Source of the DNA: Hypanus sabinus
Taxonomy: Eukaryota
Length of the DNA: 64,000 bases
Assembly (NCBI RefSeq): GCF_030144855.1
Contig: NW_026781663.1
Span: forward strand, 124,001-188,000
Reading direction: 5' to 3'
The position numbers and the translations under genes are program-made. The notes beneath the pieces are model-generated. The model did not search any database, was not told the origin of the DNA, and was given only the letters and a program-made list of their open reading frames with translations. Within the stretch, counting starts at the first letter, position 1, and the number at the start of each line of letters is the position of its first letter. Below are positions 1 through 59,752 of the stretch, piece by piece.

Positions 1-459
1 AGTTGATATAAAAGCCTTCGATAGGAAACCACGACCGCTCTAAATTAAAGCGCACAATTTAAGGACTACAGGATGTCTCACATCTCCGCATTTCAGCGAC
101 CTGACCTGGAAGAGCAACGGCCGCCAGTACGGGATAGTAATTACGGACAAGATAATAAATTGCTGAATATCCCATTTTCTGCCAGAAGTGGCGATCAGAT
201 GTACGAAAAGTGTCAACTGTCTAGATGCACTCGTTCAACGATCCCTTATACACAAGGAGGCCAGTAAAGCCCATTAATACTACTCTCCCCTTTAGTTGCA
301 TTAGCTACAGGTCAGTGAGCGAAAAATCCGTGTTTGCATCGGTCTATTTTTACTCATTGCGACATTGTGTCAGCCACTTAACTTTCCGTGGAGCATCACA
401 TACAATTCATTCGATGTTTTTAAAATTTATTTTAGAGTGTCAGAGAAATGTTGTATTAC

Positions 460-8049: not shown

Positions 8050-9815
8050 AGGGAGCAGGAAGGCTAGTGAGTTCGCCATGCTAGAATCAAGTTGGGTGAT
8101 GAACTGGAATCCACATGTAGAGGTAGGGATGGCAGAGAAACCACCAAACTGTACATATACATAGTGTTAGTCATGACACAGCAACAGGATCAGGAGTTTG
8201 CAAAGGCACAAAGAGGAGAGGATTCTGAAGAGTATATGGAGTATCGAGGGATACAGGCACGGAATGGGATTGTACTTAATAATGGTAGATTTTGTTTCCA
8301 GAATGTGAAAGAAACCAAATGATGCATTGTCACCATGAAATTTGTGAACGTCAAGCAGCAGATAGAACTAAGGAACAGCTGTCTAATCTGTGCTGATGGC
8401 CGAAATTGCGATGAGGTGTACACAATATAACCATATAACAATTACAGCACAGAAACAGGCCATCTTAGTCCTTCTAGTCTGTGCCGAACGCCTACTCTCA
8501 CCTACTCCCACTGACCCGCAATCAGCCCATAACCCTCCAATCCTTTTCTCTCCATATACCGATCCAATTTTACTTTAAATGAGAATACCGAACCTGCCTC
8601 TACCATTTCTACAGGAAACTTATTCCAGACAGCTACAACTCTCTGAGTAAAGAAATACCCCCTCATGTTACACTTAGATGTTTGCCCCCTAAGTCTCAAC
8701 TCATGTCCTCTTGTTTGAATCCACATGCAGAGGTAGGGATGACAAAGAAACCACCAAACTATACATACATATATGCATAAAGTTAGTCATGACACAGCAA
8801 CCGTATCAGGAGTTAGCAAAGGTACAAAGAGGAGAGGATTCTGAAGAGTATATGGAGTATTGAGGGATACAGGCACGGAATGGGATTGTGCTTAATAATG
8901 GCAGATTTTCGCTGCCAGAATGTGAAAGAAACCAGCTGATGTATTGTCACCATGACATTTGTGGGCATCAAGGAGCAGATACATCTATGGAACAGCTGTC
9001 GAATCTGTGATGGTGGCCGAAATTGCGAGGAGATATACAGCATTATTGTACGAATTGTTTGTGTTGTGCCCAGTAATAACCCAGATGAGATGTCTATAGT
9101 ATTTTAAGATACGCTCCGTAGAAGGAACATGTGTTACTTTAGAACATTGTTTTGGTGGATTTTCATATCCATCCCCTGGAGAAATAAAATATATCCTCGA
9201 GATAGTGGATGCTTCCACCAAGTGGATCGAGTCTTCCCCAACTGGATAATGAAAACCGCGGCCGTTACAGCCACGATTTGGTTTTGAGAGAGTTTCTACC
9301 CGTTGCCGGTTGACAAGCAAACTAGAATCAGTTATGGCCGCCGCTGCACCGCACATGTGACACAAAATGTAATGAAACTGTTTGGGGTAAAACACAGGCT
9401 GGTATCCATTATCGACCTCAATACAGTGCAATTGCTGAATGGATGAACATAACTTTAATGAAAATGTTAGCTAAAGTGAAAGAGTTAGAATCCTTGTTTT
9501 GGCTAGATATACCATCAACCGAGTGTGGTGGCATTGGGAAGGACAGCAATTAATTGACTCTATTAAGGAGGCCCATTATGTTGCCTCACATAACAGGAGA
9601 CGAAAGGATCAGCAGAACAAAACTCATTATGAGGTGCGAACAAAACCACGGGAGTAGGAAATCGGACAGAAGTTTATAATGTCGTTCTATCAGCCAAGCC
9701 CCTTTACAGCTTCCCGATTTGTAGGGATATGTGATATCGCTGACACAGCCAGTCCACCAGTACATCGAATTTAGACTGTTCCAAACAGGTTGGGTTGGTA
9801 TCATATTAACCAATT
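8050..9815 (+). mobile_element. Degenerate endogenous retrovirus pol (integrase) fragment, partly duplicated and interrupted by CR1
   Basis: Around 8945-9075 it translates as HHDICGHQG..WWPKLRGDIQHYCTNCLCCAQ (HHCC zinc finger). VDASTKWIE lies at ~9205 and a WYHI-type C-terminal motif at ~9795. Confidence 0.7.
8425..8720 (-). mobile_element. CR1 3' end insertion
   Basis: The minus ORF TRGHELRLRG..FFTQRVVAVWNKFP is typical of the CR1 C-terminus; (TGGTTATA)n-type tail. Confidence 0.85.
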
Positions 9816-11429
9816 CAAACCTCTTGGAGACAGTCAATGTCTTTTAGTAGCTGAGTTCTATAAAACATATTGTCAATGTGATGCCCTGGACCGAGATGAG
9901 ATGATCCTCTTAGAGTTATGTTTCACGCAACCACATCCAGTTTGTAACCGGAGGATGATGATAGGTCACATCTTTCCACTTGCCGATGCCAAGACGGAGA
10001 CTATAAAAGAGAGAAAAAAATAGGAGAACGCGTTACGTGGTCTTCTGGAAATAAAGTGGGCGATAATTGATCTGATATGAATGGATTTTAACAATGCGTT
10101 AAGGTTAGCTATGGTCGGACCATTCACAACGTCAGAAAGTTTGGTATCCAGGGAAAGTTGGCTGGTGGAATCAGACTGACGCCCACATAAGACAGAGGAT
10201 AGTTGGAGAGGAAGTGTTTTCTCCCTGGATGTCGGTGGACAGTGACTGAAGAGTTCTGTTCTGAGACCCTCGGCGTTATGTGTTTTTATGAATGACTTGG
10301 ATGAGGAGGAAGAAGGGTGGTTTATTGTACTTGCAATGATGTGGAGGTTGGTGAAATTATGGATGGTATAGAAGGTAGTCAGAGTTTACTATAGGACACT
10401 GACAGGGCGCAGAACAGCGCTGAGAAGTTACAGATGGAGCTCAACCCGGAACGTTACGAAGTGATCCACTTTGGAAGGATGAATTTGAAGGCAGAGGTGA
10501 TACTTTCTCGAGCCAACCGAAGGCCGCACGATTCTACGGATTCCACAATGGCAACTGAGTGGTGACACCGTCTCCAATAAACTGAGGGCCGCTCCTCGGT
10601 ACGAGAATCACAATCGGAACGGAGCGATACACTGCAGGAGCAGAAGGAAGTGTGATTGGCAGGTGAGCTTGAACACTTCCGGTGTTCTGCACATACTCAT
10701 AGTACGCTCGCAAGGCAATATAACTGACAGTAAAACAGGAGTTACGAAAAAGCGCAACTTATGGGAAAACATCCTAGGAACCTGCGGATAGTTCACAGAT
10801 TTCACTTGAGAATTTTGTTCAAAGAGAGGATGGATGGAGAAATAGTGGTAGAATTGTGGGAGGTTTGAGAATATCTTTAAATTTAAACAGACTGCATTGC
10901 ACGTCACGGGTACTGGGTGGTCAGGTCATTGACTGGCAGAGGTCAAGTTCCTGCCAAACGCCCCATGTGTGCGCTGGAAAACATTGTTCTTCAAACTGTC
11001 CACAGCCCTCGCTAATTTCCCGAAGAGACGCTCCCTTTTTGATCAAAGGTCTCTGGAATATTGCTGTGGATCTTTTAAAGTGTTTGTAGGAATACGTGCA
11101 GTGCATTTTATTGTTAAATATGTCAGCTGTCACTGTGAATTCCATCACTTGCACCGCCTGGAATGGCTGGAACGAACGAATGACGGGAATGAACGGATGT
11201 TCCCCTTCAATAAAGAAGTGTTGTCCATTTCACCTGCCAGACCAAACACCACCCCTCTGTCTAAGAAGCAAATGTGCTCCGTTGAATGCTACAAAATAAA
11301 CCAACTCCATTATGAACGCGTATGTTAGAAACAATACTGAGGTAACTATGTCCACTTTGAATAGGTGAGGTCAGGTGTCATGGAAATTAAACTTGCAACA
11401 ATCACATTACATTTTGTTTTAAAGTAAAT

Positions 11430-11656
11430 AGATTGCAATGTCCCTTGAGGAGTTAAATTCATGGACGGTGACAGAGTGAGTAAAAATAGTTTAATGTGTT
11501 TGTGCATTTGGTTGTCACTAATGTCCCTGACGTGATAGCCACGCTAATTGCCTCAGTGGAGTTGCTGTCTCCTCAATAAAAGTCTGCTAAACCGATCACC
11601 AGTCCATCTGAGCAGCTAAAACGTTCCGTACAACTGAACGCTGCTTCTGACGGAAT
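11430..11656 (+). promoter_or_regulatory. Putative proximal promoter/5' UTR of gene 1
   Basis: Much better conserved with 26080-26306 than the sequence further upstream. Contains TGACGTGA (CRE-like, 11528), CTAATTG (11544) and a TATA-position AATAAAA (11575), ~80 nt before the ATG. Confidence 0.55.
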
Positions 11657-13377
11657 ATGGGATATCCGGCGATTTACAACATCGCGGCCGTTTTCTATCC
11701 CACACTTGTAGCGGTTGGTGTCCCCGGTAAGATGCCGGTGCTGGTTACTTTATGTATGGTGCCGTCGTTTTCCTGTTTCTCTGCTGCAGTATTCGTACTG
11801 TTACCACGCACAGATGCTACCATCGGTTGAAAAGTGTTTCCTGAATGGAGGATTCAGGCATCTAATGGTTTTATTTCCATTTTTCTTTTGTCAATTAATT
11901 TGTCATTGTTTCATAATTTCACCTCGCTAAGCTTTCTGAAGTGATGTTGGTCCGAGTCTCTATCAGTGCAGACACTTCGACCTGATAACAACGTGGCAGC
12001 TTATTTAAATGACGGTCCCGTCTATTTCCGACACGTAGGTCTGTTTTTTCTGTAAGTCAGTAAATGAGAACTCGTGCTTTATATCTCCTTGATTCCATTT
12101 GTAACCGCTACAAACAATCCCTTCAGCTATTTTAGCTCTAATAATGGAAACGGTGTAGTTCACAGGAGCGATCGACTGTTCACCGGTACGTGAGTCGTGG
12201 AACTCGGATGCCTCGCTCTAAACTGTGGGAAGGTCGCCAATCCACTGACACTCACATCCGTCATTGTCCTCCAGCCGGAGTGCAGCGACAGAGACAGCAC
12301 ACACTGGATTCCCGCTTTCCACTTCCAAACAGACCATACCCTGCATAGCATCGGAGGAATCGGGTGGGGTGGGGGCATTTAATCAGTTGCAGCTAAACCA
12401 TACCCTCATCGCATCGACAGAATGGGGTATTCAGAGAGTTGTCGCTGACGATATTTCTTTTTTTTCATACTCTTGCAGTTAATTTAACGGCGATTGTGAT
12501 CCTATCTCGGGGAAAATGCGGACTCTCCAAATGCATCACCCGTTACCTGGTTGGAATGGCAACAGCGGATCTGATGGTGGTTATCGTGTTTGCTTTAGTG
12601 GAACAAACCAACAATATCCACATTTATTCCAGATCCCTGCTCATCACTCCTGTGTGCGCTCTGACACTTGTATTTGTGGCTATGACACGGGACTGTTCTG
12701 TTTGGTTCACCGTTAGTTTTACCTTCGATCGTTTCATCGCAATATGTTGCCAAAAGCTTCGGGAAAGATACTGCACCGAGAGAACAGCAACGGTGATTAT
12801 CGTGACCGTGGTTATAGTGATTTGCGTGAAATGTGTCCCGTTCTACTTTGCCATTGAACCTTACGTCATCATTGACAACACGCCGTGGCGGTGTGCAGGC
12901 TCATATGAATACGTTACATCACCCGTGTGGAGAGGATACGAATTACTCGACAGTATTTTAACACCATTACTGCCAATTGGCTTAATACTAGTGTTTAACG
13001 GGTTAACCGTAAGGCATATCATTGTGGCAAATAGAGTCCGCAGAAGGCTTCGGCGCAGCAGCGACAATCAGAAAGATGCCGAGGTGGAAAAACGCAGAAA
13101 ATCGATGATTTTGTTATTTCCTATATCAGCTAATTTCATATTATTTTGGATGCCCTATGTAGCGCATTCCCTAAAATGGCAAACGCAAAACTATTATTAC
13201 CAGGACAGATATTTGAGTTCCCCTGTATACATCCTACAGCAATTTGGGTTCATGTTACAAATTCTCAGCGTGTGCACCAACACTTGCATCTATACACTGA
13301 CACAGAGGAAATTCAGAGAAGAGGTGAGGAATGGAATGAAATATGTGTTTACATTAAATGGCCACCTGTGTAGATAA
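11657..13377 (+). CDS. GPR139-like class A GPCR, gene 1; join(11657..11726,12479..13377), 322 aa
   Basis: Exon 1 encodes MGYPAIYNIAAVFYPTLVAVGVP plus 1 nt, then a GTAAG donor at 11727. The acceptor tttttttcatactcttgcAG ends at 12478, giving an in-frame junction (GVP-V-NLTAIVILSRGKC). Seven hydrophobic segments, ADL in TM2, DRF in TM3, FWMP in TM6 and NTCIY in TM7. AATAAA at 13413. TM1 (YP..GxPxN..xxILS) and TM3 (SVWxTVxFTxDR) resemble GPR139/GPR142. Confidence 0.92.
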
Positions 13378-14399
13378 CGCCCGCGTCTAATGTCAATTCA
13401 GCGGAGTTTTCAAATAAAGTCGTTTTAAAAAGAAAAGTTTTGACAAATATGTTATGAATTCAGACTATCATATGCCTGGTCATCCTGAAATTTCTGAATT
13501 GGTGGAAGATTGATTACTTCCTACAGTTCAGGAAGGTAGCAATACAAACGTTCATTGCTACTGGTTTGATTGTGACATTGGTTGAAGTATGTTTCAAACT
13601 ATCACAGAAACTCAACTCGACTGTCACAAGCCCAAGGATTGCTTGAGGATTTTCCGTGTTTTAGTTGTTTCAAAATGGACGGGATCAGGTGTGAGACTGT
13701 AACGGGAATGTCACGGCCCAGAACGCTGGCTGTTTATTCATTGCCATAGATATTTCTTGATCAGCTGAGGAACAGAAGTGAATCGTCCCTCGCATCAATT
13801 ACCACTCAATTCCCCGTCTTGTCTCTTTCCTCCCTCCACTCAATCATTAATATGCACAGTCTGATGCCAATCTCCCCTCCCTCTACACAACCATTTCTAC
13901 ACCTTTATTACAAATCCATTCTGTCCTCCCTCCACAGTCTGATCATTATCCCCCGTCCCCTAACATCCCTTCCCTCCATACACTCATTAATCATCACACT
14001 CAGCCCTCCTTTCGAAAACCGATAATTTCGCCGTCCAATCCCACTCTTCCTTCTCTGGTACATCGATTAATACCGCATCATGTATGATGCCACATCCTGA
14101 CACCAGATGACGATTAACACCCAAACAGATAGAATTCCAAACTCCCCTTTATCCGGTTACCCCGTATAATCCATCTAATGAAATCTTACAAATGCCTCTC
14201 CACACTGTTCCTGGCATAATCCCTCTGGCCGCTCCCTCAACCCACGATTAATAATCCAACAATTCCATTCACACTCTGGACTTCCTCCACACGCCCACCA
14301 ATGCAATGACCACGATAACCTATCTTCCCTCTGAATGGCGGGCAAACTCAATAATTCCTATCACCCCCCCAATGTGAAGGCCACAAGCCAAAAGTTCAG

Positions 14400-15720
14400 G
14401 ATTGTCATGAGATCCAAATGAGCGTGGTTTCTATTACTGAGGAGAAGGTGCTTGGGGGGGACTAAAAGAAGTGATGTCAGATTTTGGCGGTAATTGAGGT
14501 ATTTTGAAATAGTTCGGATGAGTAGAATATAGCGAAAATGAATCCATTGCCGTCTTGTAGTAGAGAAGTTGTCAAAGTACCGGACATTATAGGGAAAGTA
14601 GCCTGACCTCAGTGGCTGGAAACATTTGGTTCTCCATCACAAGAATGCGGTCTCGGGTCCACAGAGACACATGATAAATAGGCTGAATTTTGCCATGGTT
14701 AATGAAAATGATGACTTCGAGGCCAAATGCACCGGCAATAAAATGTTAGGTGGAGGGGTTGCTATTGCTGATGAAGCAGGACGTTTGCAGAAGAACCCGG
14801 ACGGACTTGTAGATTGGGCAAATAAATGCAAATGGGATCCGTTGTTGCGAAGACCATGGTCACGCAATGTGGTAGAAGGAACAACATCGCAGACTCATTT
14901 CTAAATAGGAAAAACATTCAGAAATCGGAGTTGCAAACGACATAGGAGTCTTCCTTCAAGATTCTCAAAAGATCGCCTTGTAGGTGCTGTCAGTGGTATT
15001 GAAGGCAAAAACGCTGTTGGTGTTTATTTCAAGAGGACTCCGATATAAAATCAACGATGTAACGCTGAGGCATCATAAAGTTTTTGAAATACCTAAGCTG
15101 GAGTATTGTAAAGAGGGTTGAGCCTTACTTTCCCGGGAAACGACGTGATATCATTTCAGACTATCCAGAGGATGTTTACGAAATTGATCCCCGGAATAAA
15201 GCGGTTGACGTACGAGGAGAGTTTGATGGCTCTGCGCCTGTACTCATTGCGGGTCAGGAGAATGAGAAAGTTTCTCTATGAAACCGATCGAACACTGACA
15301 GGTCTAGTTAGAGCGGACGTTTATTACAGAGGGGGAATGTAGCCCAGAGTCCACACCCTCTGAATACAGGAGATCTCTTAGAACAGCGACGAGGAGGCAT
15401 TTCCTGAGCAAAAGCATGGCGAATGTGTGGAATTAATTTGCACAGACAGCCGTCGAGGACAGATCATTGAGTATATTTAATGCGGATTCAGACGTTTTCT
15501 AGACTTGTCAGGGTTTCAATGGCGACAGGGAGAAGGGATGCTCTTTTATTAAGCCTGTTCAGAGATGTAGCGTAGAACAGGGGCCCTTCCAGCCATCGAT
15601 CTGCATCGCCCAGAATCCAGCCTGGTTTTTCTCCCCAGCCTAATCGCCGACTCTATGGGCGGAATGTCCTAATACTGCTCGGTTGTTTATGGTGTTATGG
15701 TCTCACCAACTAAGTAACCT
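14400..15720 (+). mobile_element. Degenerate CR1 fragments
   Basis: ..RLQKNPDGLVDWANKC.. and IQRMFTKLIPGIKRLTYEESL..LYSL are CR1 RT C-terminal motifs. Confidence 0.75.
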
Positions 15721-16147
15721 GTAGAGCAAAGCCAGACTTCATCACATTGCTTCCTACGCTTCCCCAATGCTCTCCTTCTGCCCAGCAAACGGCATATTCC
15801 TGCCACTACCTTCCCTCACACCATTGTTCCGATCTACCCTCCCTGCTTCCCGTGTACAAGCCCGTGTTCCACATTCCCCCAGCTGCATCTCCATAAGCCT
15901 CTGATAACTCATACGCGCGAAACTCACCCATCTTGCTCCACGCTACTTACCGGCCCGCCCTTGCTCCAACGCCTTACACCGATCCTTCAACGCCCATTTT
16001 AATGCAGGCCTTCCACCCGCATATCTTAGCTGCCCATTTCTCTCCACAATCGCTGCCCGATTCACTGAGTCCCACCAGCAGCCGGATCATCGTTCCAGGC
16101 ACTGGAGGCCTGAGAGGTTTAGTGGGTAATCTAACACATGATATGAA

Positions 16148-17978
16148 TGTTATGGTCCGGTCCGGAGCCCGCGTTCTGTGTTTTGATCCGGTCCGCTGAC
16201 TCCGGACACCGGGTCTTGTAACTGTCCCTCCTTTCACCCTTGAGCCCAATTAGTCACACCTGTGGATCATTGTGGCTCGCTGGGGCTCAAGGAGGCGCAC
16301 CTGATCCCCATCGAATGGCAGTGTATATAGGGGGCTCTGCTTCTGAGTGGAGTTGGGGGGTCGTCTTTCTCATCCTGTCTATCCTGCTTACCCTGGTCGT
16401 CCAGCTTTTCCTGTTCCTCCGATTCGCCCTGGCTTGGAATACCCATCGTTAAACACGAGTTCCTCGAGTAAGTCTGGCAGTCACCCCGGACCAAGTTCCC
16501 TTCCTATTCCTTGCCTCTGTCCGGCAAACCTGGCCGGACTGCCGTTGCCCGGAAGGGGACTCTGACCCTTTCCTATCCCTCTCCTTCTATGGGTTGTGCC
16601 CTGCAACCCGCCCAGGTGTCCCGTGACCTGCCCAGGGCCGCGTGTTCCTGCCCCGGAGGACCGGGCTCTGCCCAGGAGTTATGCGGCCGCCGAGTGAACT
16701 CCTAGCCCCAGCATGAAATCCAAGATCCTTTCTTGCCTGAACTCCGGGATTCTCCTTGCCTGAACTCCGGGATTCTCCTTGCCTGAACTCCGGGATGCTC
16801 CTTGCCTGAACTCCGGGATGCTCCTTGCCTGAACTCCGGGATGCCCCTTGCCTGAACTCCGGGATCTTCCTTGCCTGACCTCCGGGATCCTCCTTGCCTG
16901 AACTCCGGGATCCACCTTGCCTGAACTCCGGGATCCCCCTTGCCTGAACTCCGGGATGATCCTTGCCTGAACTCCGGGATGCTCCTTCGCTGAACTCCGG
17001 GATGCTCCTCGCCTGAACTCCGGGATCCTCCTTCCCTGAACTCCGGGATGCCCCTTGCCTGAACTCCGGGAACCCCCTTGTCTGAACTCCAGGATGCCCC
17101 TTGCCTGAACTCCGGGAATCCCCTTGTCTGAACTCCAGGATGCTCCATGCCTGAACTCCGGGATGCCCCTTGCCTGAACTCCGGGATGCTCCTTGCCTGA
17201 ACTCCGGGATTCCCCTTGCCTGAACTACGGGATCCTCCTTGCCTGAACTCCGAGATCCCCCTTGCCTGAACTCCGACATGCCCCTTGCCTGAACTCCGGG
17301 ATGCTCCTTGCCTGAACTCCGGGATGCTCCTTGCCTGAACTCCGGGATGCTCCTACCTGAACTCCGGGATCCTCCTGCCTGAACTCCGGGATCCTCCTTG
17401 CCTGAACTCCGGGAGCCTTCCTTGCCTGAACTCCGGGATCCTCCTTGCCTGAACTCTGGGATCCTCCTGCCTGAACTCCGGGATCCTCCTTGCCTGAACT
17501 CCGGGATCCTCCTTCCCTGAACTCCGGGATCCTCCTTGCCTGAACTCCGGGATGCCCCTTGCCTGAACTCCGGGATGCCCCTTGCCTGAACTCCGGGATG
17601 CCGCTTGCCTGAACTCCGGGATTCCACTTGCCTGAACTCCGGGATTCCGCTTGCCTGAACTCCGGGATCCTCCTTGCCTGAACTCCGGGATTCCCCTTGC
17701 CTGAACTCCGGGATTCCCCTTGCCTGAACTCCGGGATGCTCCTTGCCTGAACTCCGGGATGCTCCTGCCTGAACTCCGGGATGCTCCTGCCTGAACTCTG
17801 GATCCTCCTGCCTGAACTCTAAGACCCGCTTGGAACCCCAGAATCACATTGACGCCACGTCCCTCACGCACACCACGGTCTCCACATCTTGTCTATCGTT
17901 CAGTTGTTCCCAGTCTGCCACGAGTACTTCAGTGCCTGCGTCCTGCACTTGGGTCCAGCCTCCTGTCCCCATATGACA
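16148..17978 (+). mobile_element. Solo LTR containing an expanded minisatellite
   Basis: TGTTAT...ATGACA inverted termini, near-perfect 5-bp target duplication (ATGAA/ATGAC) and an internal TATATA box at ~16324. Confidence 0.65.
16732..17820. repeat. Minisatellite, ~24-bp unit (cttgcctgaactccgggatgctc), ~45 copies
   Basis: Directly visible tandem array with 23-25 bp unit variants. Confidence 0.95.
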
Positions 17979-22463: not shown

Positions 22464-23960
22464 ATGGACTTTAATATGGCATTCAGCACCGTTAACCATG
22501 GTAGGGCCTTTCAGAACGTTAGATGGCTTTGTATCCAGGGAGAGTTGGCTGGTGGATTCAGAACTGATTCCCAGAGGAGACAGAGGATAGTTGTGGATGG
22601 AGCGTTTCCTCCCTGGGTGCTGGTGCCAGTGGTGTACTTCAGAGATCTGTTCTGAGTCCCCCGGATTTTTGTGCTTTTAAAATGATGTGAATAAGGAAGT
22701 GGAAGAGCGGCTTATTGCATTTGCAATGATGTGGAGGTTGGTGGAATTATGGATTATATAGAAGTGTGTCACAGATTACAACAGGACAGTGACAGGACGC
22801 AGAGCAGCGCTGATAAGTTACAGATGATGCTCAACCCGGAAAGTAATTCACTTTGGAAGGATGAATTTGAAGGCAGAGGGGTGATATTTTCTTGAGTCAA
22901 CCGAGGGCCTCACGTTAGTACGAGTTCCACAATGGAAACAGAGTGGTGAGACTCTCTCCAATAAACTGAGGGCCGCTCCTCGGTACGAGAACCACAATCG
23001 GCACGGAGCGGTGCACTGCAGGAACAGAAGGAAGTCTGATTGACAGGAGAGCTAGAACACTTTCGCTGTTCTGCACATACTTACAGTGACGCTCGAAAGG
23101 CAATATCCCTGACAGTAAATCAGGAGGAAAAAAGTACAACTTCGTGGCAAGTAATGGAACAGCCTGGAAACCTGCGGATAGTTCAGAGATTTAGCTTCCA
23201 AATTTTGTTCAAAGACCGAACGGGTGGAAAAATAGGGGTAGAATTGTAGCAGTTTTCAGCATATCGTTAAAATTAAACAAACTGTATCGCACCTTACGGG
23301 TATGAGGTGGTCAGGTCATTCACTGACAGAGGCCAAGATTGTTCCAAACGGCCATTGTTTGCGCTGGAAAACATTGTTCTTCAAACGGTCTGTAGCCCTC
23401 GCTAATCTGCCGAGGACACGTTCCCATTTTGACCACAGGTCCCTGGAATATCGCTGTGGATCTTTTAAAGTGTTTGCAGGAATATGTACACTCTATTTTA
23501 CTGTAACACATGTCAGCTGTCACTGTGATTTCCATCACTCAAAGCGCCCGGATTGACTGGAACAAAAGAAAGAAAAACATGTTTCCGCAATGGGGGGGTT
23601 CAGGCATCTCTTTGATTTATTTTCATGTTCCGTACTTCGATCGAAATTCTTTTTGACAACTTTTCATAATTTCACCTCGCTGGAGTTTCCATTTTCATAT
23701 TTTGATGTAAGTGTTTTCCTCTTTTGTCAACCAGTTATGTGCCGATATTGTCGTTGTTTCATAATTTCACCTCGCTAAGCTTTCTGAAGTGACGCTGGTC
23801 TCTGCATTTCTTGGTCCGCATCTCTATCAGTGCAGACACTTCGACCTTATAACAACGTGGCAGCTTTTTTTAAATGACGGTCCAGTCTAATTTCGACACT
23901 TAGATCTGTTCTTCTTTAAGTCAGTAAATGAGGACTCGTACTTTATATCTCCTTGACTCG
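22464..23960 (+). pseudogene. Relic third copy of the gene 1/2 duplication unit (upstream block plus partial intron; promoter, exon 1 and exon 2 missing)
   Basis: 22464-~23575 aligns to ~10080-11185, then jumps to intron-like sequence (23590-23960 ~ 11840-12095), then restarts at the beginning of the gene 2 unit. Confidence 0.75.
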
Positions 23961-24395
23961 ATTTTGTAAGGCATTTGATACGGTTAACCGTGGTAGGACC
24001 GTTCATAGCGTCAGAAGGTTTGGTATCCAGGGAGAGTTGGCTGGTGGATTCAGGACTGACGCCCACAGAAAACAGACTGTAGTTGTGGATGTAAGACTTT
24101 CTCCCTGGATGTCGGTGACCAGCGGAACCATGCACTGGTCGGTTTCAGACCCCCGGCTTTGGTGTTTTTATGTATGATTTGGATGAGGAGGTGGAAGGGT
24201 GGGTTATTGTACTTACAATGATGTGGATGATGGTGGAATTATGGATAGTATAGAGGATTGTCACAGGTTACAACAGGACAGTGACAGGACGCAGAGCATC
24301 GCTGGGAAGTTACAGATGGAGTTCAACCCGACAGGTACGAAGTGATTCTCTTTGGGAGAATGGATTTGAAGGCAGAGGTATTACTTGCTCGTGTC

Positions 24396-24800
24396 AACCG
24401 AGGGCCGCAAATTAGTACAAGTTCAACAATGGAAACAGAGTGGTGAGACTTTCCCCAATAAGCCGAGGGCCACACATTAGTACGAGTTCCACAATGGAAA
24501 CAGAGTGGTGAGACTTTCTCCAATAAGCCGAGGGCCGCACATTAGTACGAGTTCCACAATGGAAACAGAGTGGTGAGACTTTCTCCAATAAGCCGAGGGC
24601 CGCACATTAGTACGAGTTCCACAATGGAAACAGAGTGGTGAGACTTCCTCCAATAAGCCGAGGGCCGCACATTAGTACGAGTTCCACAATGGAAACAGAG
24701 TGGTCAGACTTTCTCCAATAAGCCGAGGGCCGCACATTAGTACGTGTTCCACAATGGAAACAGAGTGGTCAGACTTTCCCCAATAAGCCGAGGCCCGCTC
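24396..24800. repeat. 65-bp tandem repeat, ~6 copies
   Basis: agccgagg(g/c)c recurs at 24461, 24526, 24591, 24656, 24721 and 24786. Confidence 0.95.
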
Positions 24801-24904
24801 ATCGGTACGAGAACCACAATCGTCACGGAGCGGTGCACTGCAGGAGCAGGAGGAAGTGTGATTGACAGGTGAGCTTGAACACTTCCGCTGTTCTGCACAT
24901 AATC

Positions 24905-25357
24905 ATAGAGACGATTGTCTTATGGAAACAGTTGAGTGAACTTGGCCTTTTCCCCTTGGAGCGACGGAAGATGAGAGGTGACCTGATAGGCGTGTATAAG
25001 ATGATGAGAGGCATTGATCGTGTGGATAGTCAGAGGATTTTTCCCATGGCTGAAATGGTTGCCAGAGAGGGCACAAGGATTAAGGTGCTTGGGAGTAGGT
25101 ACAGATGAGCTGTCGGGGGTAGGTCTTCCTCGCACGCAGAGAGTGGTGAGTGCGTGGAATGGGCTGCCAGCAACGGTGGTGGTGGCGGATACGATAGGGT
25201 CTTTTAAGAGACTTTTGGATAGGTACATGGCGCTTAGAAAAATAGAGAGCTATGTGTTACGCTAGTAATTGCTTAGGTAGGGACATGTTCGGTACAACTT
25301 TGTGGGCCGAAGGGCCTATATTGTGCTGTAGGTTTTCTATGTTTCTACGTTTGTATG
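24905..25357 (+). mobile_element. Young 5'-truncated CR1 insertion specific to the gene 2 unit
   Basis: LSELGLFPLERRKMRGDLIGVYKMMRGIDRVD and a (TTTCTATG)n tail; absent from the paralogous positions ~10700 and ~23085. Confidence 0.88.
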
Positions 25358-26079
25358 AAAGACAATATATCTGAAATCAAATCAGGAGAAAAACACAACT
25401 TCGTGGCAAATAAATGGCAGCCTGAAAACCTGCGGAATGTTCAGAGATTTTACTTGTTACTTTTGTTCAAACATAAAATGGATGGCGAAATACTGGTAGA
25501 ATTGTAGCTAGTTTGAGAATATCTTTAAAGTTAGACAGACTGCATGGCAGCTCACGGGTGCGGGGTGGTCAAGACATTCACTGGAAGAGGTCAGATTCCT
25601 GCCAAACGCCCCATGCTTGCGCTGGAAAACATTGTTTTTCAAACTGTCCACAGACCTCGCTAATCTCCCGAGGACACGTTTCATTTTTGATCACAGATCT
25701 CTGGAATATCGCTGTGGATCTTCTAAATTGTTTGGAGGAATATAAGTGCAGTGTTATTCTAACATATGTCAGCTGTCATGTCTATTAAATCACTCACACC
25801 GTCCGGAATGACTGGAACGGACGAACGAACGAAAAGAATGAACGAATGTTCCCCTTTAATAAAGAAGTGTTCTCCATTTCACCTGCCAGAACAAAGTACT
25901 TCCTTCAATTTCAGAAGCGAATGTGCTCCGTCAAATGTTAGAAAATAAATCGACTTCAATATGCATGCCGACTTTAAAAGCAACACAGATATAAAAATAT
26001 CCAATTTTAATAGCTAAAGCCAGGTATCATGGAAAATAAGACAGAAAATTCAAATCATACTTTCTTTTAAAGTAAACAG

Positions 26080-26306
26080 ATTGCAATATCCCTTGAGGAG
26101 TTAAATTAATGACAAGGGAACAGTGAGTAAAAATAGTTTAACGTAATTGTTTGTGCAGTTGGGTGTCACTAATGTCCCTGACGTGATAGCCACGCTAATT
26201 GCCTCAGTGGAATTGCTCTCTCCTCAATAAAAGTCTGTTAACCGATCACCAGTCCATCTGAGCAGCTGAAACTTTCCGTAGAATTGAACGCTGCTTCTGA
26301 CGGAAT
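26080..26306 (+). promoter_or_regulatory. Putative proximal promoter/5' UTR of gene 2
   Basis: Paralogous to the gene 1 promoter block, with the same motifs retained. Confidence 0.55.
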
Positions 26307-28221
26307 ATGGGATATGCGGCGATTTACTACATCGCGGCCATTTTCTATCCCACAATTGTAGCGGTTGGTGTCCCCGGTAAGATGCCGGAGCTGGTCACTT
26401 TATGTATGGTGCCGTCGTTTTCCTGTTTTCTGCTGCAGTATTCGTACTGTTACCAAGCACATATGCTACCATCGGTTGAAAAGTGTTTCCTGAACGGAGG
26501 ATTCAGGCATCTAATAGTTTTATTTCCATTTTCCTTTTGTCAATTAAATTATTATTGTTTCATAATTTCACCTCGCTAAGCTTTCTGAAGTGATGCTGGG
26601 CTCTGCTTATCTATGTCCGAGTTTCTATCAGTGCAGAAACTTCGATATTATAACAACGTTATCCGCTCTGTTACTGAGCACAGATGCTACCGTCGGCTGA
26701 AACGTGTTTCTGGAATGGAGGATTCAGTAATCTAATGGTTTTATTTCCATTTTCAGTACTATGATGGCAGTGATTTCTTCTTTTGTCATTTAAGTTGGTG
26801 TCGATATTGTCGTTGTTTTATAATTTCACCTCTCTAGGCTTTCTGAGGTGATGCTGGTCTCTGGTTTTCTAGGTCCGATTCTCTATCACTGCAGAATCTT
26901 CGATCTTATAACAACGTGACAGCTTATTTAAATGACGGTCCAGTCTATTTTCAACACATAGGTCTGTCTCTATGTCCGTAAATGAGATCTCATGATTTAT
27001 ATCTCATTGACTCCACTACAACCAGTCGCTTCAGCTATTTTGGCTCTAATAATGGAAATGGTGTTGTTTACAGGAGCGATCGACTGCTCACCGGTACGTG
27101 AATCGTGGAACTCGGATGCCTCGCTCTAAACTGTGGGAAGGTCGCCAATCCACTGACACTCACATCCGTCATTGTCCTCCAGCCGGAGTGCAGCGACCGA
27201 GACCGCACACACTGGATTCCCGGTTTCCACTTCCAAACAGACCATACCCTGCATAGCATTGGTAGAATGGGGGCATTCAGGGAGCTGACCGTATTTCTAT
27301 TTTGTTTCCAAATTTCTTGCAGTTAACTTAACGGCGATTGTGATCCTTTCTCGGGGAAAATGCGGACTCTCCAAATGCATCACCCGTTACCTGGTTGGAA
27401 TGGTGACAGCGGATCTGATGGTGGTTATCATTGTTGCTTTAGTGGATCAGACCAACAATATCTACATTTATTCCAGATCCCTGCTCATCACTCCGGTCTG
27501 CGCTCTGACACTTATATTTCGGACTGTAACGACGGATTGTTCTGTTTGGTTCACGGTCAGTTTTACCTTCGATCGCTTCATCGCAATATGTTGCCGAAGG
27601 CTGCGGGAGCGATATTGCACCGAGAGAACAGCAACGGTGGTTATCATGACCGTGGTTATAGTGAGCTGCGGGAGATGTGCTCCGGTTTACTTTGCCCTTG
27701 AACCTTACGTCATCATTGACAACATGCCCTGGCGGTGCACCACCACATATGAATACGCTACTTCACACGTGTGGAGAGGATACCAATTACTGGACAGCAT
27801 TTTAACACCATTGATTCCCATCGGCTTAATCCTGGTGTTTAACGGGTTAACCGTAAGACATATCGTTGTGGCAAATAGAGTCCGCAGAAAGCCTCGGCAC
27901 AGCAGCGACAATCAGAAAGATGCCGAGGTGGAAAACCGCAGAAAATCGATTGTTTTGTTGTTTTCTATATCAGCTAATTTCATATTATTTTGGATGCCCT
28001 ATTTAGTCCATTCCTTGAAATGGCAAGTTCAAAACTATTTTTTCGAGGACAGATGCTTGAGTTCCCCGGTGTACATCCTACAGCAATTTGGGTTCATGTT
28101 GCAAGTACTCAGCATGTGCACCAATACTTGTATCTATACACTGACACAGAGGAAATTCAGAGAAGAGCTGAGGAATGGAATGAAGTATGTGTTTACTTTA
28201 AATGGCCATTTGTGTAGATAA
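26307..28221 (+). CDS. GPR139-like class A GPCR, gene 2 (recent paralog of gene 1); join(26307..26376,27323..28221), 322 aa
   Basis: Exon 1 encodes MGYAAIYYIAAIFYPTIVAVGVP plus G, with a GTAAG donor at 26377. The acceptor tttcttgcAG ends at 27322. Exon lengths match gene 1 (70+899). Open frame with 7TM motifs. AATAAA at 28256. Confidence 0.92.
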
Positions 28222-45333: not shown

Positions 45334-47520
45334 ATGGTGTATCCAATCAGCTTGCGGATTCGAGAAGTTTACTATCCTTCCATTTCAGTCTTTGGAATTC
45401 TCGGTAAGCCTCAGTGTCAGCTGCTCTTGGTGGGAATTGTTAATTCCAGCCTTGTGATTATCCCTGTCGCTGGTTTCCACTCTCGCTGCCCAGTCACCGT
45501 GTTCCGCGTATTAGGAATGGAAAGGAAACATTGGGAAAGTGGATTCTGGAATCTAGATCGGAAAGAAACTGCTGCAGAAATTTAACGAAACAGCCAACAT
45601 CTGTGGAATTCAATAGATTAGGCATTGTTCTTCTAGACGTTTCTGTTCAATAGTGGGATGCTTGGTTCTCTGTGCTTTTGGTCTTGTAGAAGCTGCACTG
45701 TATTTGGGTGTATTCTGTTTACACAGCCCACGGAGATGAGAACATTTGACTGTTTGTGTTTCTATGTGAGCGGTTGTCTGCGGAGAGGTGTCACGATCGA
45801 ACTACCGGTTGGTAGTAACACTGTAGACAATGTGAGGAGGTCCACGTTGCTGCATGAAGCCCGTGGCTTTTTTTAAGTAAATGTGAGCACTGTGGCTGAA
45901 TGTGAAGCTGTGGTGGACAGTACAATGAAGTCGGTGAGTAAGTTGACGCAATCGACTCGGTGAAACACGGTTATCAATACTGTGAAATGCATTCTGTTAT
46001 ATTCACATCTGACGCATACAGACATCTGACTGCGGCAGCGAGCTCTGCATCGCTTTGTTGAGTTGGATTCGGTGGGAGTCTTTCTGTCTGTCTGTCAGGT
46101 AGATTTAGATTGCGCTGTACCTGTTGGAATCTGTCAATGTTCACTTTACCTGCTTTCCACATATTTTGATTTGCCTGGATGAATGTTTCCAGCATTTCCT
46201 GCTTCTGTTCCGTTCTTCGGTGTCCTGTCGCTGACAAGGAACACCCTGGAAGCCGATGATTATCTAATGGAAGAATCCCTCCATTCGTGTCCGAATTTAT
46301 TCACTCAGTTGACACGAGACCGGGAATGCGCCGGTAGAAAATATTCCACCCACTATAGACTGTGAGGGGGTAGTTACCCAGTTTCAGCTTTCAACTGACT
46401 GCAGATTACGATCATCAGTAAGGAATCTGAATTCAGCTCACATTGACTTTATTTTACTGCGTGAACTCCTTCTCTGTCCATGCGGTCACTACAATCTGTC
46501 TCCACCCTTCTACTGCTAAATGCAGCAATAAAGTGCAAATATTACAGGATTAAACAGCAGCATTAATTTCTACTCAGTATTTTTCAACTTGCTGTTCCTG
46601 TCTCTCTTCCAGCGAACTCGGTGGCGATTGTGATTCTGTCCCGCGGAAAGTGCGGTCTCTCCAAATGTGTCACTCACTATCTGATGGGAATGGCCGCGGC
46701 CGATCTCCTGGTCGTTATCTCTGATCCGCTGCTGAGGGGGACTGCTGAGATTTATTTTCCCCGAACATTCCTGCTCCTCACTCCTGTGTGCAGACTCGGC
46801 AGATGGCTAATTTTTCCGAGCACTGCAGCCTCAGTCTGGCTGACTGTCGCTTTCACCGTCGACCGATTTGTGGCTATTTGCTGTGAGAAGCTGAAAACAA
46901 AATATTGCACCGAGAGAACGGCGGCTGTGGTTATCGGGACAGTGAGTCTGCCGGCCTGTCTGGAATGTGTTCCCTGGAGCTTTGTGTACGAGCCTTTGGT
47001 AATGATTGATGGTGTTCCCTGGCATTGTGCTGTTACATCGAGCTACAAAAACTCTCCCTCATGGGCGGCATTTACGATGTTTCACCGCATTTTAACCCCT
47101 TGTATCCCATTCTCTCTGATTTTGTTGTTCAATATTCAGACTGCCAGGCGGATTCTAGCGGCCAGTCGAGCCCGCAGGAGGCTCCGGGGGCAAAAGAGTG
47201 AAGAGAATGACAATGACCGGGAGATGGAGAATCGACACAGATCCATAGTTTTGCTCTTCAGCATAACCGGTAGCTTCATATTGTTGTGGATAACACAGGT
47301 GGTATTTTATATCTATCAGCGGATTTCAATGAATTTCGTTTATTCTGTCACAGATCCACGTTACATCACAGAAAAGACAGCAGCAATGCTACAAGTCCTC
47401 AGTTCCTGCACCAACACGTGCATTTACGTCCTGACTCAGAGCAAATTCCGAGAAGAACTCAAAAATGTGGTGACATACCCTCTGAATCGGATTTTGAAAC
47501 TAATGAAACGGGAAAAATAA
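45334..47520 (+). CDS. GPR139-like class A GPCR, gene 3; join(45334..45403,46613..47520), 325 aa
   Basis: Exon 1 encodes MVYPISLRIREVYYPSISVFGIL plus G, with GTAAG at 45404. The acceptor tctctcttccAG ends at 46612, giving the junction GIL-A-NSVAIVILSRGKC. Motifs ADLL, VDRF and NTCIY. TATAAA at 45244 and AATAAA at 47617. Confidence 0.92.
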
Positions 47521-57560: not shown

Positions 57561-59752
57561 ATGAGTCGACCGGCGATCCTACAGGTGAAAGACGTTTGTT
57601 ACCCTGTTCTAGCGGTGTTTGGTTTACCCGGTAAGTCGTATTAATACAGTGTCTAACAGCTATTGGCCTTCGGCAGGACATTGATATTCTTTATGAAGTA
57701 TGATCAGAAGATGCGCCGCAATGTGTCCATTATACAAGATGCTCAATAGTCGCTATATCGTTCCGTGTCCACACGGCCGGTGAGGAGACTTTCCTCTGGA
57801 CACAGGAGGCCGTCTCCTCATGTCCGGTGCAAAGGGAACGGAGGGATGCCATCGCTGAAATAGCAGTAGTGTTTCGCTCAGGAGGGAATGTATTTTTCAT
57901 CGTGCCTGTCAGAGGATAAAAGTGTACTACTACACATGAAGTGGCCATTCGGCCCGCTATGTCAACCTGAACCTCTGTGGTCCTATCTACCGGCACCTGA
58001 CTAATATTCCTCTACCTCCCTCCCACCTCGGCCCTTTACAAGCTTATCTTGCGTGGTACAACAGATCCCGCACCGTCCGCTCCGCGGGGAGCTGTTTCCA
58101 CACTCGCAGCAAACTCTGAGTAAATAATCTCTCTCAGATTACCCACGAAGTAATTCAGCTTTCACGCTAATCATATTGTCGTTCAAAATAATTTCACACA
58201 ATCTGAGAGGAAAAGGCTGAAATACATTTACACCAATTATACCCCTAATGGATACAAAGATTGCTTATTCCCGTCTGTATCCTTGTAAATATTTTGAACA
58301 CTGTCACGAATTTTGATATACTTCCCGTACTGAGATAAGTAGAATTGTAAACAATACTACGGATTCGGCTTTAATTACGTATTGTACAAATTCAACTCAA
58401 TAACTCAACCCCTGCGCTCAGAGTCCTGATTTGTGATGGCCGATGTGCAAAATGATCTCTGTGCCGCCCGGTTTACCCAGTGTTTTACTCTAAATGAATG
58501 ACGGGTCTGTATTTACAGCTCCGTTTCTTTTATGCGGAGCACCTCACAGCCTAGCATTCACCACGCAATGGTAACCTGGTTTACCCTCCTGCAGGGCAGC
58601 ACATTACCCAGGCTCCCAGTACATTACACGTGCTGTTTCTCAGCCCGTTTCCAGCTGGTGAAGATCACACTGTGAAGTGCCTTTCCGTCCTGCCTCTGCT
58701 CACTCTCAGACCACCGGACCAAACAGAAATACATCCGAACGTATTTCAGAAATAAGTTGTCAGATTCACCAGTCTTCCTCCTTCAGTGATGTCTTTATCT
58801 GTTGGTGTTTCTTTCTGTTGCAGCTAATTTGTTAACAATTATTATTCTGTCCCGGGGAAAATGCGGTCTTTCCAAATGCATCTCTGCCTACATGACGATG
58901 ATGGCGGTGTCAGATCTATCGGTCATTCTCATCAATGTCCTTGTCTATGAGATTTTAATATTCCGCCTGTCCAGTTCATTTCTGCATTATACGGAAGTCC
59001 TTAAAGCCACGATCTACGTGCTGGCGGTCACTCTGGAACTATCACGGTGGTACACGGTGGCCTTCACCTGTGATCGATATGTTGCCATATGTTGTCAGAA
59101 GTTTAAAACAAAATACTGCAGAGTGAAGACAGCCAGAATCCTGTCAGCTGTATTACTGGCGGGGCTTTGCTTGGAGAATATACCCCTCTTGTTTGCATTT
59201 CAGCCTCAACGAATAATTGGAAATATTTCGTGGGGTATCCGCCCGAAATTGGACATCTTCAACTCTCCAAACCTTGTTGCGCTCATCAGATTCAAAACCT
59301 TTCAAAACCTGTGCGCATTTGGTTTAATACTTCTGTTTAATGGGATGACGGCCAGGCATATCTTAGTGACCAGCAAATCCCGGAGGGGCTTCCGAACCCA
59401 TAAGAGTAAGATTGAACGTGACCCGGAGATGGAGAACAGAAAAAAGAGCATCATATTACTGTTCTGTGTATCGGGCAGCTTCATGCTATTTTGGCTGTCG
59501 TCGGCAGTGACCGATATTATCGCCAGCATAACCATGTATTTTGATCGCGACTATAACTCTGCCCGATATATCGCTGCTCAAGCCGGGGCTCTGCTCACGA
59601 ACATGAGTTCCTGTACCAACACGTGTATTTATGCAGCGACACAAACTAACTTCAGGGCAGAGTTGAAAACGTTGATACTGTCTCCTTGGACGCTTATCCG
59701 GGAATTGATCAAGACAAATGTCAGATCTCCTAAGGCTTTCTCCCATGAGTAG
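57561..59752 (+). CDS. GPR139-like class A GPCR, gene 4 (divergent); join(57561..57630,58824..59752), 332 aa
   Basis: Exon 1 encodes MSRPAILQVKDVCYPVLAVFGLP plus G, with GTAAGT at 57631. The acceptor ctttctgttgcAG ends at 58823, giving the junction GLP-A-NLLTIIILSRGKC. Motifs SDL, CDRY and NTCIY. TATAAA at 57482 and AATAAA at 59913. Confidence 0.9.
57910..58670 (-). mobile_element. Old CR1 3' fragment in the gene 4 intron
   Basis: Degenerate reverse complement of the CR1 3' end (ggccattcggccc.. tail; similar to 31760-32450). Confidence 0.55.

What the first reader, a model, noticed from the sequence alone, without database searches (positions are those of the whole stretch)
12655..12730. An arginine 'staircase' on the pocket face of TM3 across the four paralogs
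Seen: counting back from the DR arginine (3.50) with no gaps, a mid-helix Arg sits at 3.36 in gene 1 (VFVAMTRD, CGG at 12688) and at 3.32 in gene 2 (IFRTVTTD, CGG at 27520). It is at 3.29 in gene 3 (CRLGRWLIF) and at 3.40 in gene 4 (VTLELSRW). Genes 1, 2 and 4 also have an acidic 3.37 (D/D/E). Known: 3.29, 3.32, 3.36 and 3.40 line the orthosteric pocket in class A GPCRs. Inference: each paralog places a cationic anchor at a different depth, tuning it to different anionic or zwitterionic ligands such as amino acids, carboxylates or peptide C-termini.
Basis: partly seen in the sequence, partly recalled or inferred. Interest (0 to 1): 0.75.

Follow-up and report, generated by a model that had tools for sequence, protein, structure and literature searches.

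The report
Movable arginines in stingray receptor pockets
Four neighbouring stingray receptor genes each carry an arginine at a different height on the inward face of their third membrane helix. These are four unrelated evolutionary events in a very large shark-and-ray receptor family with a fast-changing ligand pocket, not a built-in graded series.

Summary
Four intact two-exon class A GPCR genes from Hypanus sabinus carry Arg at 3.36, 3.32, 3.29 and 3.40. Genes 1, 2 and 4 also have D/D/E at 3.37.

In 350 relatives, charged residues in TM3 occur only on one helical stripe: 3.23, 3.26, 3.28, 3.29, 3.32, 3.33, 3.36, 3.37 and 3.40. None occurs on the other faces, so the placement is not random.

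The "staircase" itself is not a family rule:
- 228 of 350 relatives have no basic residue at 3.28-3.40.
- Gene 2's R3.32 is the ancestral state of its subfamily.
- Gene 1's R3.36 is a recent relocation. It lies in the most diverged 24 nt between genes 1 and 2.
- Gene 3's R3.29 is one of 12 residue types at the most variable site of its clade.
- Gene 4's R3.40 is Hypanus-specific. It sits in a remodelled core motif (P5.50 lost) below the pocket.

The pockets of genes 1 and 2 are net acidic, which argues against a simple anion anchor. Side-chain direction could not be read, because the models came without coordinates. Ligands and expression are unknown.

The scan has already noted this GPR139-like family many times elsewhere in this genome.

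The parts
11657..11726 (+). Gene 1, exon 1 (23 codons plus 1 nt; N-terminus and upper TM1)
   Evidence: tblastn with Mobula full-length relatives. GT donor, phase-1 intron.
12479..13377 (+). Gene 1, exon 2 (rest of the 322-aa receptor, stop included)
   Evidence: ORF. AG acceptor at 12477-12478. Pfam 7tm_1 at 81 bits against a cutoff of 30.5.
12646..12747 (+). Gene 1, TM3 (3.22-3.55). Holds V3.32, R3.36 (12688-12690) and D3.37 (12691-12693).
   Evidence: AF2 helix at residues 56-89 of the exon-2 translation. Codons checked. This is the densest gene 1-gene 2 divergence window: 10 of 24 nt at 3.30-3.37.
26307..26376 (+). Gene 2, exon 1
27323..28221 (+). Gene 2, exon 2. R3.32 codon CGG at 27520-27522; D3.37 at 27535-27537.
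45334..45403 (+). Gene 3, exon 1
46613..47520 (+). Gene 3, exon 2. R3.26 at 46792-46794; R3.29 at 46801-46803; A3.37.
57561..57630 (+). Gene 4, exon 1
   Evidence: The spliced product equals P0240 exactly (332 aa, Hypanus sabinus).
58824..59752 (+). Gene 4, exon 2. E3.37 at 59036-59038; R3.40 at 59045-59047. It lacks C3.25, the ECL2 Cys, P5.50 and P6.50.
   Evidence: AF2 mean pLDDT 91.

Best explanation
The window holds a tandem array of four intact paralogs of the elasmobranch 'GPR139-like' class A receptor family. The family behaves like a ligand-sensing repertoire: the intracellular face and helix cores stay fixed while the pocket positions vary.

TM3 exposes one stripe to the pocket (3.26, 3.28/3.29, 3.32/3.33, 3.36/3.37, 3.40). 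It is the only part of the helix where the family allows charged residues, and basic residues have been gained or lost there dozens of times.

The four arginines are four separate products of this turnover:
- Gene 2 keeps the ancestral R3.32 of its subfamily.
- Gene 1 lost R3.32 (now V) and gained R3.36 one turn deeper, next to the conserved D3.37. This happened within a local burst of change.
- Gene 3 carries Arg at the hypervariable pocket-mouth site 3.29.
- Gene 4 carries a Hypanus-specific Arg at 3.40, replacing Gln, in a clade that rebuilt the P5.50-I3.40-F6.44 connector and lost the TM3-ECL2 disulfide.

What is shown: the positions, the stripe restriction, and the four histories. What is inferred: that the side chains point into the pocket or core, and that each change retunes pocket charge and shape and so ligand choice. 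The graded 'staircase' across the array is a coincidence of these events rather than a design.
For: **Gene models and family**
- Gene models are intact with GT-AG phase-1 introns. Gene 4 equals an annotated H. sabinus protein.
- Pfam 7tm_1 is above its cutoff for all four.
- The family is large: 2230, 2090 and 751 clusters at E<=1e-10 for the three queries. All named hits are elasmobranch.

**Stripe restriction**
- Charged residues occur only at 3.23, 3.26, 3.28, 3.29, 3.32, 3.33, 3.36, 3.37 and 3.40 in 350 sequences. Periodicity peaks at 100 degrees, p about 0.004.
- Minimum changes of basic state, on a tree built without these columns: 30, 8, 10, 23, 4, 4, 4 and 1 at 3.26, 3.28, 3.29, 3.32, 3.33, 3.36, 3.37 and 3.40.

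**Genes 1 and 2**
- The clade {g1, g2, P0001, P0002, P0020} has 99/97 support and nests among R3.32 receptors. Its states are R3.32, R3.32, R3.33, R3.36 and H3.33, all with D3.37.
- g1-g2 dN/dS is 0.31. The densest divergence window of the whole CDS is 3.30-3.37 (10 of 24 nt, permutation p 0.019).
- R3.36 recurs in a shark group, P0015, P0104 and P0119.

**Gene 3**
- 3.29 is the most variable site of the protein in its clade: 12 residue types in 22 sequences. The next sites are 5.25 (ECL2), 3.28, 2.65, 7.39, 2.61, 6.51 and 7.36.

**Gene 4**
- R3.40 occurs only in H. sabinus paralogs. Pristis and Narcine have Q, Mobula has L, and the rest of the family has V (334 of 350).
- Polar 3.40 goes together with loss of C3.25, the ECL2 Cys, P5.47 and P5.50.

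**Structural precedents**
- GPR139 pocket positions 3x29, 3x32, 3x33 and 3x36 (PMC8807744).
Against: - Side-chain orientation was not measured. The structure tool returns no coordinates, so 'pocket-facing' rests on helical periodicity and on solved relatives that are only about 20% identical.
- No ligand, expression or population data exist. The read search found only short high-copy contigs from related species.
- All four neighbours carrying a stripe Arg is rare under family frequencies (0.2%), which leaves some room for a non-coincidental reading.
- The family sample is the best 120 hits of each of three searches. It is not a random or complete sample.
Confidence: 0.62

Rival explanations
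1. Each paralog's TM3 arginine is the primary cationic anchor for an anionic or zwitterionic ligand, set at a different depth so that the four receptors bind different ligands such as amino acids, carboxylates or peptide C-termini.
For: - Arg occurs only on the stripe.
- R3.36 anchors carboxylates in HCA2 (PMC10043007).
- The nearest solved relative, GPR139, responds to L-Trp and L-Phe through one pocket Arg plus acids (PMC8807744).
- Genes 1 and 2 keep one Arg plus the acids D3.37, E/Q5.39 and D5.42, which suits zwitterions.
- Gene 3's pocket mouth is strongly basic: R2.61, R3.26, R3.29, R5.43, R6.59 and K7.36.
Against: - 228 of 350 relatives have no basic residue at 3.28-3.40.
- R3.29 is one of 12 states at a hypervariable site.
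- R3.40 lies in the PIF connector and goes with loss of P5.50.
- The pockets of genes 1 and 2 are net negative.
- The nearest relatives of gene 1 lack R3.36.
Confidence: 0.17
2. The arginines are internal counter-charges. They form salt bridges with the pocket acids (2.61, 3.37, 5.39, 5.42) to stabilise the empty receptor or set its basal activity. Their position can drift as long as one base stays near the acids.
For: - In raw counts, basic 3.32 goes with acid 2.61 (odds ratio 30), acid 3.37 (5.7) and acid 5.42 (4.6).
- In the gene 1/2 clade the base moves among 3.32, 3.33 and 3.36 while D3.37 stays.
- Gene 4 pairs R3.40 with E3.37, one turn away.
Against: - Phylogenetically independent contrasts show no coupled change. 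When basic 3.32 is gained or lost, the acids stay the same in about 9 of 10 contrasts, so the raw association is a lineage signature.
- About a quarter of the gene-1-like subfamily keep the acid triad with no basic residue at 3.28-3.40.
Confidence: 0.14
3. The differences are neutral drift or decay in redundant or dying copies. On this view the odd Arg residues, especially R3.36 in gene 1 and R3.40 in gene 4, have no function or are assembly or allele noise.
For: - Other arrays of this family in the genome contain broken copies (earlier scan notes).
- Genes 1-3 had no identical protein in the searched database.
- No RNA evidence was found.
- Gene 4 lacks several class A hallmarks.
Against: - All four reading frames and splice sites are intact.
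- g1-g2 dN/dS is 0.31 at dS 0.25.
- Signalling motifs are invariant.
- Gene 4's clade features are shared by Hypanus, Mobula, Pristis and Narcine.
- R3.36 recurs and persists in two shark orders.
- R3.40 is shared by three H. sabinus paralogs.
Confidence: 0.07

Closest known systems
Human GPR139 / GPR142 (orphan class A receptors activated by L-Trp, L-Phe and peptides)
   Same: - GPR139 is the best solved-structure match by sequence (E 1.8e-8), and NCBI names most relatives 'probable GPR139'.
- Both have an ECL2 beta-hairpin and lack P7.50.
- Both have an acid at 2.61.
- Both have a charged pocket that combines one Arg with several acids.
   Different: - Identity is only about 20%.
- R6.51, reported as unique to GPR139/GPR142 (PMC8807744), is absent here (Y, Y, Q, S).
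- GPR139 has E3.29 and E3.32 where these receptors have L/R/I and V/R/I/L, so the Arg sits on TM3 instead of TM6.
- The family is massively expanded and found only in elasmobranchs among the named hits.
HCA2 (niacin receptor) and SUCNR1: carboxylate receptors with a TM3 arginine
   Same: Arg at 3.36 (HCA2) or at 3.29 (SUCNR1) reaches into the orthosteric pocket, and 3.37 is a neighbouring ligand contact.
   Different: - In HCA receptors R3.36 is conserved across the family and sits in a basic pocket.
- Here R3.36 and R3.29 are rare, recently acquired states.
- Gene 1's pocket is net acidic.
- There is no sequence kinship beyond class A.
Lineage-expanded chemoreceptor repertoires of class A type (odorant receptors, TAARs, MRGPRs)
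   Same: - Tandem arrays and a large copy number.
- Conserved signalling face with hypervariable pocket positions.
- Charged pocket residues that set ligand class. From general knowledge, TAARs use D3.32 and D5.42 for amines.
   Different: - No expression in a sensory tissue has been shown.
- It is a different sequence family.
- Most members have T instead of P at 6.50 and 7.50.

Membership tests
Class A (rhodopsin-like) GPCR | Pfam 7tm_1 above its gathering score | tested here: met
   81.1, 82.1, 70.2 and 41.8 bits against a cutoff of 30.5.
Class A (rhodopsin-like) GPCR | Seven-helix fold matching solved class A receptors | tested here: met
   AF2 pLDDT 83 (gene 1, exon 2) and 91 (gene 4). 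Foldseek gives TM 0.7-0.78 to CCK1R, NTSR1, GALR and GPR139.
Class A (rhodopsin-like) GPCR | Hallmark residues N1.50, D2.50, D3.49-R3.50, W6.48, N7.49 and Y7.53 | tested here: met
   All are present in the four genes and nearly invariant in 350 relatives. P7.50 is T in most members, and P6.50 is T in most and S in gene 4.
Class A (rhodopsin-like) GPCR | C3.25-ECL2 disulfide pair | tested here: inconclusive
   Both cysteines are present in genes 1-3. Both are lost together in gene 4 and its batoid clade.
GPR139/GPR142 orthology group | Arg at 6.51, reported as unique to GPR139 and GPR142 and critical for activation (PMC8807744) | tested here: not met
   6.51 is Y, Y, Q and S in genes 1-4. In the family it is Y96, Q53, A49 and so on, and basic in only 28 of 350.
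GPR139/GPR142 orthology group | Acidic pocket wall D2.61, E3.29, E3.32 | tested here: not met
   Only the acid at 2.61 is kept, in genes 1 and 2. 3.29 is L/L/R/I and 3.32 is V/R/I/L.
GPR139/GPR142 orthology group | Close sequence similarity or reciprocal best match | tested here: inconclusive
   GPR139 is the best PDB match, but only at E 1.8e-8. No tree with vertebrate GPR139/142 was built.
Carboxylate receptors with a TM3 Arg anchor (HCA, SUCNR1 type) | The TM3 Arg is conserved across orthologs and paralogs | tested here: not met
   R3.36 occurs in 5 of 350, R3.29 in 5 of 350 and R3.40 in 2 of 350. The nearest relatives of genes 1, 3 and 4 mostly lack them.
Carboxylate receptors with a TM3 Arg anchor (HCA, SUCNR1 type) | The Arg binds an acidic ligand group | not testable with these tools
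   No ligand is known, and no model coordinates were available.
Chemoreceptor-like expanded repertoire | Tandem arrays, many copies, a variable pocket and a fixed signalling face | tested here: met
   Four genes plus a fifth exon 1 lie in 64 kb. There are thousands of clusters. The most variable sites are pocket positions, and the ICL and TM cores are invariant.
Chemoreceptor-like expanded repertoire | Expression in sensory cells | tested here: inconclusive
   No run on record as RNA holds the gene. The laid contigs were short, high-copy pieces from relatives.

The most novel reading that the evidence does not exclude
In the gene 1/2 subfamily, a conserved acidic triad (D3.37, E5.39, D5.42) together with a single arginine that evolution moves along the TM3 stripe (3.28, 3.32, 3.33, 3.36) could form a tunable site for zwitterions. 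The acids would hold the amine and the movable Arg the carboxylate. If so, this undescribed elasmobranch family could be a large amino-acid or amine sensor repertoire, and could account for chemosensation in animals known for very few classical odorant receptors.
Probability: 0.1. Interest if true: 0.8.

Novelty: new member of a known kind. Interest (0 to 1): 0.35.

Why it matters
The specific claim, an arginine staircase, reduces to ordinary pocket turnover in an expanded receptor family.

The analysis still yields testable handles on an orphan family that I could not find described in the searched literature:
- a strict charge-permitting stripe on TM3;
- a conserved acid triad with a relocatable base;
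- a natural Arg 3.32-to-3.36 swap between two 85%-identical neighbours, which suits swap mutagenesis;
- a batoid clade that replaced the P5.50-V3.40 connector with A/V5.50-Q/R3.40.

If the family proves to be sensory, these sites would be the first places to look for ligand-class determinants.

Tried and rejected
1. **Whole-helix variability moment.** The entropy periodicity over 3.22-3.46 was not significant (p 0.77). Variability is dominated by a depth gradient, and only the charge-permitting pattern is periodic.
2. **Coupled evolution of basic 3.32 with acids 2.61, 3.37 and 5.42.** The raw odds ratios are strong, but phylogenetically independent contrasts give no support. I rejected this as evidence for a salt bridge.
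3. **Enrichment of gene 1-gene 2 replacements at pocket positions overall.** By my own hand count over one search's differences, using a pocket-position list recalled from memory, about 8 of 50 fall at canonical pocket sites. I ran no statistical test, but that looks like no clear excess. Only the TM3 patch stands out.
4. **Reads.** No RNA holder was found. The laid runs gave only short, very high-copy contigs from related species, for example a Mobula-like R3.32 version as a loose end at 12675. They say nothing about the H. sabinus allele or about expression.
5. **Side-chain orientation from AF2.** The models are confident, but no coordinates are returned.
6. **Literature.** Four searches for GPR139 with shark, cartilaginous, Chondrichthyes or expansion terms found no description of the family. 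One broad search was uninformative.

Full report
**What is in the window**

The window carries four class A GPCR genes on the + strand, about 15 kb apart. Each has a short first exon of 23 codons plus one base, a GT-AG phase-1 intron of about 0.75-1.2 kb, and a second exon with the rest of the protein.

| Gene | Exon 1 | Exon 2 | Length |
|---|---|---|---|
| 1 | 11657-11726 | 12479-13377 | 322 aa |
| 2 | 26307-26376 | 27323-28221 | 322 aa |
| 3 | 45334-45403 | 46613-47520 | 325 aa |
| 4 | 57561-57630 | 58824-59752 | 332 aa |

The spliced gene 4 product is identical over all 332 residues to a Hypanus sabinus protein, P0240, which NCBI names 'vasopressin V2 receptor-like'. This fixes the species and validates the gene model.

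All four pass Pfam 7tm_1. The best solved relative by sequence is human GPR139, but only at E 1.8e-8. Word searches returned 2230, 2090 and 751 database clusters at E<=1e-10. Every named hit among the 120 listed per search is from sharks, rays or skates, and most are called 'probable GPR139'. Earlier agents of this scan met the same family many times elsewhere in this genome.

**The observation**

Counting back from R3.50 without gaps gives these states:
- Gene 1: R3.36 (CGG at 12688) and D3.37.
- Gene 2: R3.32 (CGG at 27520) and D3.37.
- Gene 3: R3.29, a further R3.26, and A3.37.
- Gene 4: R3.40 and E3.37.

The register is sound. An alignment of 356 family members has no indel across 3.21-3.50. 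AlphaFold2 predicts one unbroken TM3 helix in gene 1 (pLDDT 83; exon-2 product only, since the spliced protein has no reference) and in gene 4 (pLDDT 91).

**Is the placement random?**

It is not. In 350 relatives, charged residues in TM3 above the DRY motif occur only at these positions:

| Position | Charged residues in 350 relatives |
|---|---|
| 3.23 | few |
| 3.26 | 124 basic |
| 3.28 | 24 basic, 4 acidic |
| 3.29 | 10 basic, 12 acidic |
| 3.32 | 85 basic |
| 3.33 | 6 basic, 4 acidic |
| 3.36 | 5 Arg |
| 3.37 | 189 acidic, 4 basic |
| 3.40 | 2 Arg |

There are none at 3.25, 3.27, 3.30, 3.31, 3.34, 3.35, 3.38, 3.39 or 3.41-3.48, and a single acid at 3.24.

This on/off pattern has alpha-helical periodicity, peaking at 100 degrees (permutation p 0.003-0.005). 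I built a tree without these columns. On it, the basic state changed at least 30, 8, 10, 23, 4, 4, 4 and 1 times at the eight stripe positions. The stripe restriction therefore reflects many independent events, not one inherited pattern.

The solved GPR139 complex places 3x29 and 3x32 in the ligand pocket, and 3x33 and 3x36 in its deep part (PMC8807744). R3.36 binds the carboxylate of HCA2 agonists (PMC10043007). [quoted passage not shown] From these I infer that the stripe is the pocket face. I did not measure it, because the structure tool returns no coordinates.

**Is there a staircase rule?**

There is not. 228 of 350 relatives have no basic residue at 3.28-3.40. Each of the four Arg has its own history.

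*Gene 2.* R/K3.32 is the majority state of its subfamily (74 of 119), together with D3.37. On the tree it is ancestral to the gene 1/2 clade.

*Gene 1.* The clade {gene 1, gene 2, two Mobula proteins, one unnamed protein} has 99/97 support. Within it the basic residue sits at 3.32 (gene 2, P0001), 3.33 (P0002) or 3.36 (gene 1), or is replaced by H3.33 (P0020). All keep D3.37.
- Genes 1 and 2 differ at 50 of 322 residues, with dN/dS 0.31 and dS 0.25.
- The densest 24-nt window of differences in the whole coding sequence is 3.30-3.37, with 10 of 24 nt (permutation p 0.019).
- Both Arg-bearing codons differ at two bases. This fits local selection or import of a patch from another paralog, and I could not tell which.
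- R3.36 next to D3.37 also occurs in Heptranchias and Pristiophorus proteins, so the state recurs and persists.

*Gene 3.* In its ray-specific clade of 22 sequences at 74-82% identity, 3.29 is the most variable site of the entire protein, with 12 residue types. The next most variable sites are 5.25 (ECL2), 3.28, 2.65, 7.39, 2.61, 6.51 and 7.36, which are mostly classical pocket and vestibule positions. Arg is simply one of its states.

*Gene 4.* V3.40 is nearly invariant in the family (334 of 350).
- A batoid clade (Hypanus, Mobula, Pristis, Narcine) instead has Q. Mobula has L, and only the H. sabinus paralogs have R.
- The same clade lost C3.25 and its ECL2 partner, and also P5.47 and P5.50.
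- Positions 3.40 and 5.50 are partners in the P-I-F core motif below the pocket. R3.40 is therefore better read as part of a rebuilt connector than as an orthosteric anchor.

**Pocket charge**

The four pockets differ far beyond TM3:

| Gene | Charged pocket residues | Net character |
|---|---|---|
| 1 | E2.61, D3.37, E5.39, D5.42 against R3.36 | acidic |
| 2 | D2.61, D3.37, D5.42 against R3.32 | acidic |
| 3 | R2.61, R3.26, R3.29, R5.43, R6.59, K7.36 against D2.57, E7.35 | basic |
| 4 | mixed | mixed |

In the gene-1-like subfamily, D3.37, E5.39 and D5.42 are kept in most members, whether or not a basic residue is present on TM3. A net acidic pocket argues against a plain anion anchor in genes 1 and 2. 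Cationic or zwitterionic ligands fit better.

Raw counts link basic 3.32 with acids at 2.61, 3.37 and 5.42. Independent contrasts on the tree show that the acids do not change when the base is gained or lost. I therefore do not claim a co-evolving salt bridge.

**Chance**

I drew relatives at random from each gene's own subfamily sample. All four carried a stripe Arg in 0.2% of draws, and at four different positions in 0.03%. This is rare. But the pattern was chosen after the fact, in a family with many arrays in this genome, and the four histories above are unrelated. I read the array-wide series as coincidence, on top of a real position-restricted turnover.

**Comparison with known families**

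These are class A receptors. They are not GPR139/GPR142 orthologs:
- They lack R6.51, which is reported as unique to those two receptors, and have Y, Y, Q and S instead.
- They lack E3.29 and E3.32.

By evolutionary mode they resemble odorant-type repertoires, but no expression data exist. Four literature searches found no description of the family.

**Limits**

- No coordinates, no ligands, no expression data and no population data were available.
- The family sample is the top 120 hits of each of three searches.
- Gene 1 was modelled without its first 24 residues.

Noticed in passing
window 107-175 (minus strand): A fifth first exon of the same receptor family lies on the opposite strand. 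It encodes 23 residues that match the exon-1 pattern of the family. Its second exon would lie beyond the start of the window.
   Followed up: no
window 16732-17819: A 23-bp minisatellite with 47.6 copies (91% matches) lies between genes 1 and 2. It produces a spurious 346-aa ORF on the minus strand (16587-17627).
   Followed up: partly
window 24398-24820: A 65-bp tandem repeat of 6.5 copies (94% matches) lies upstream of gene 2.
   Followed up: no
window 58824-59752 (gene 4) and relatives P0241-P0250: A batoid clade of this family lost the TM3-ECL2 disulfide pair, P5.47 and P5.50 together, and has a polar residue (Q or R) at 3.40. Gene 4 alone also has S at 6.50. The clade is kept across Hypanus, Mobula, Pristis and Narcine.
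   Followed up: partly
family-wide (alignment of 350 relatives): Most members have Thr instead of Pro at both 6.50 (T 235, P 83) and 7.50 (T 320). This is unusual for class A receptors.
   Followed up: no
window 9001-16000 versus 23651-30650: Intron and flanks of genes 1 and 2 are 84-88% identical, about the same as or slightly less than the coding sequence (89.4%). The neighbouring non-coding DNA is therefore not 'nearly identical', as another first-stage note on this window says.
   Followed up: yes
window 61065-62060: A 331-aa ORF downstream of gene 4 has only a weak SCAN-domain match, below the cutoff (17 bits against 27). It may be derived from a mobile element.
   Followed up: partly
window 44272-44585: A run of 314 N (assembly gap or mask) lies about 0.75 kb upstream of gene 3's first exon. 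I left it untouched.
   Followed up: no
P0242 (H. sabinus paralog of gene 4): This annotated paralog has a two-residue deletion in TM3 at about 3.35-3.36. That would shift the helix register, so it may be an annotation artefact or a decaying copy.
   Followed up: no
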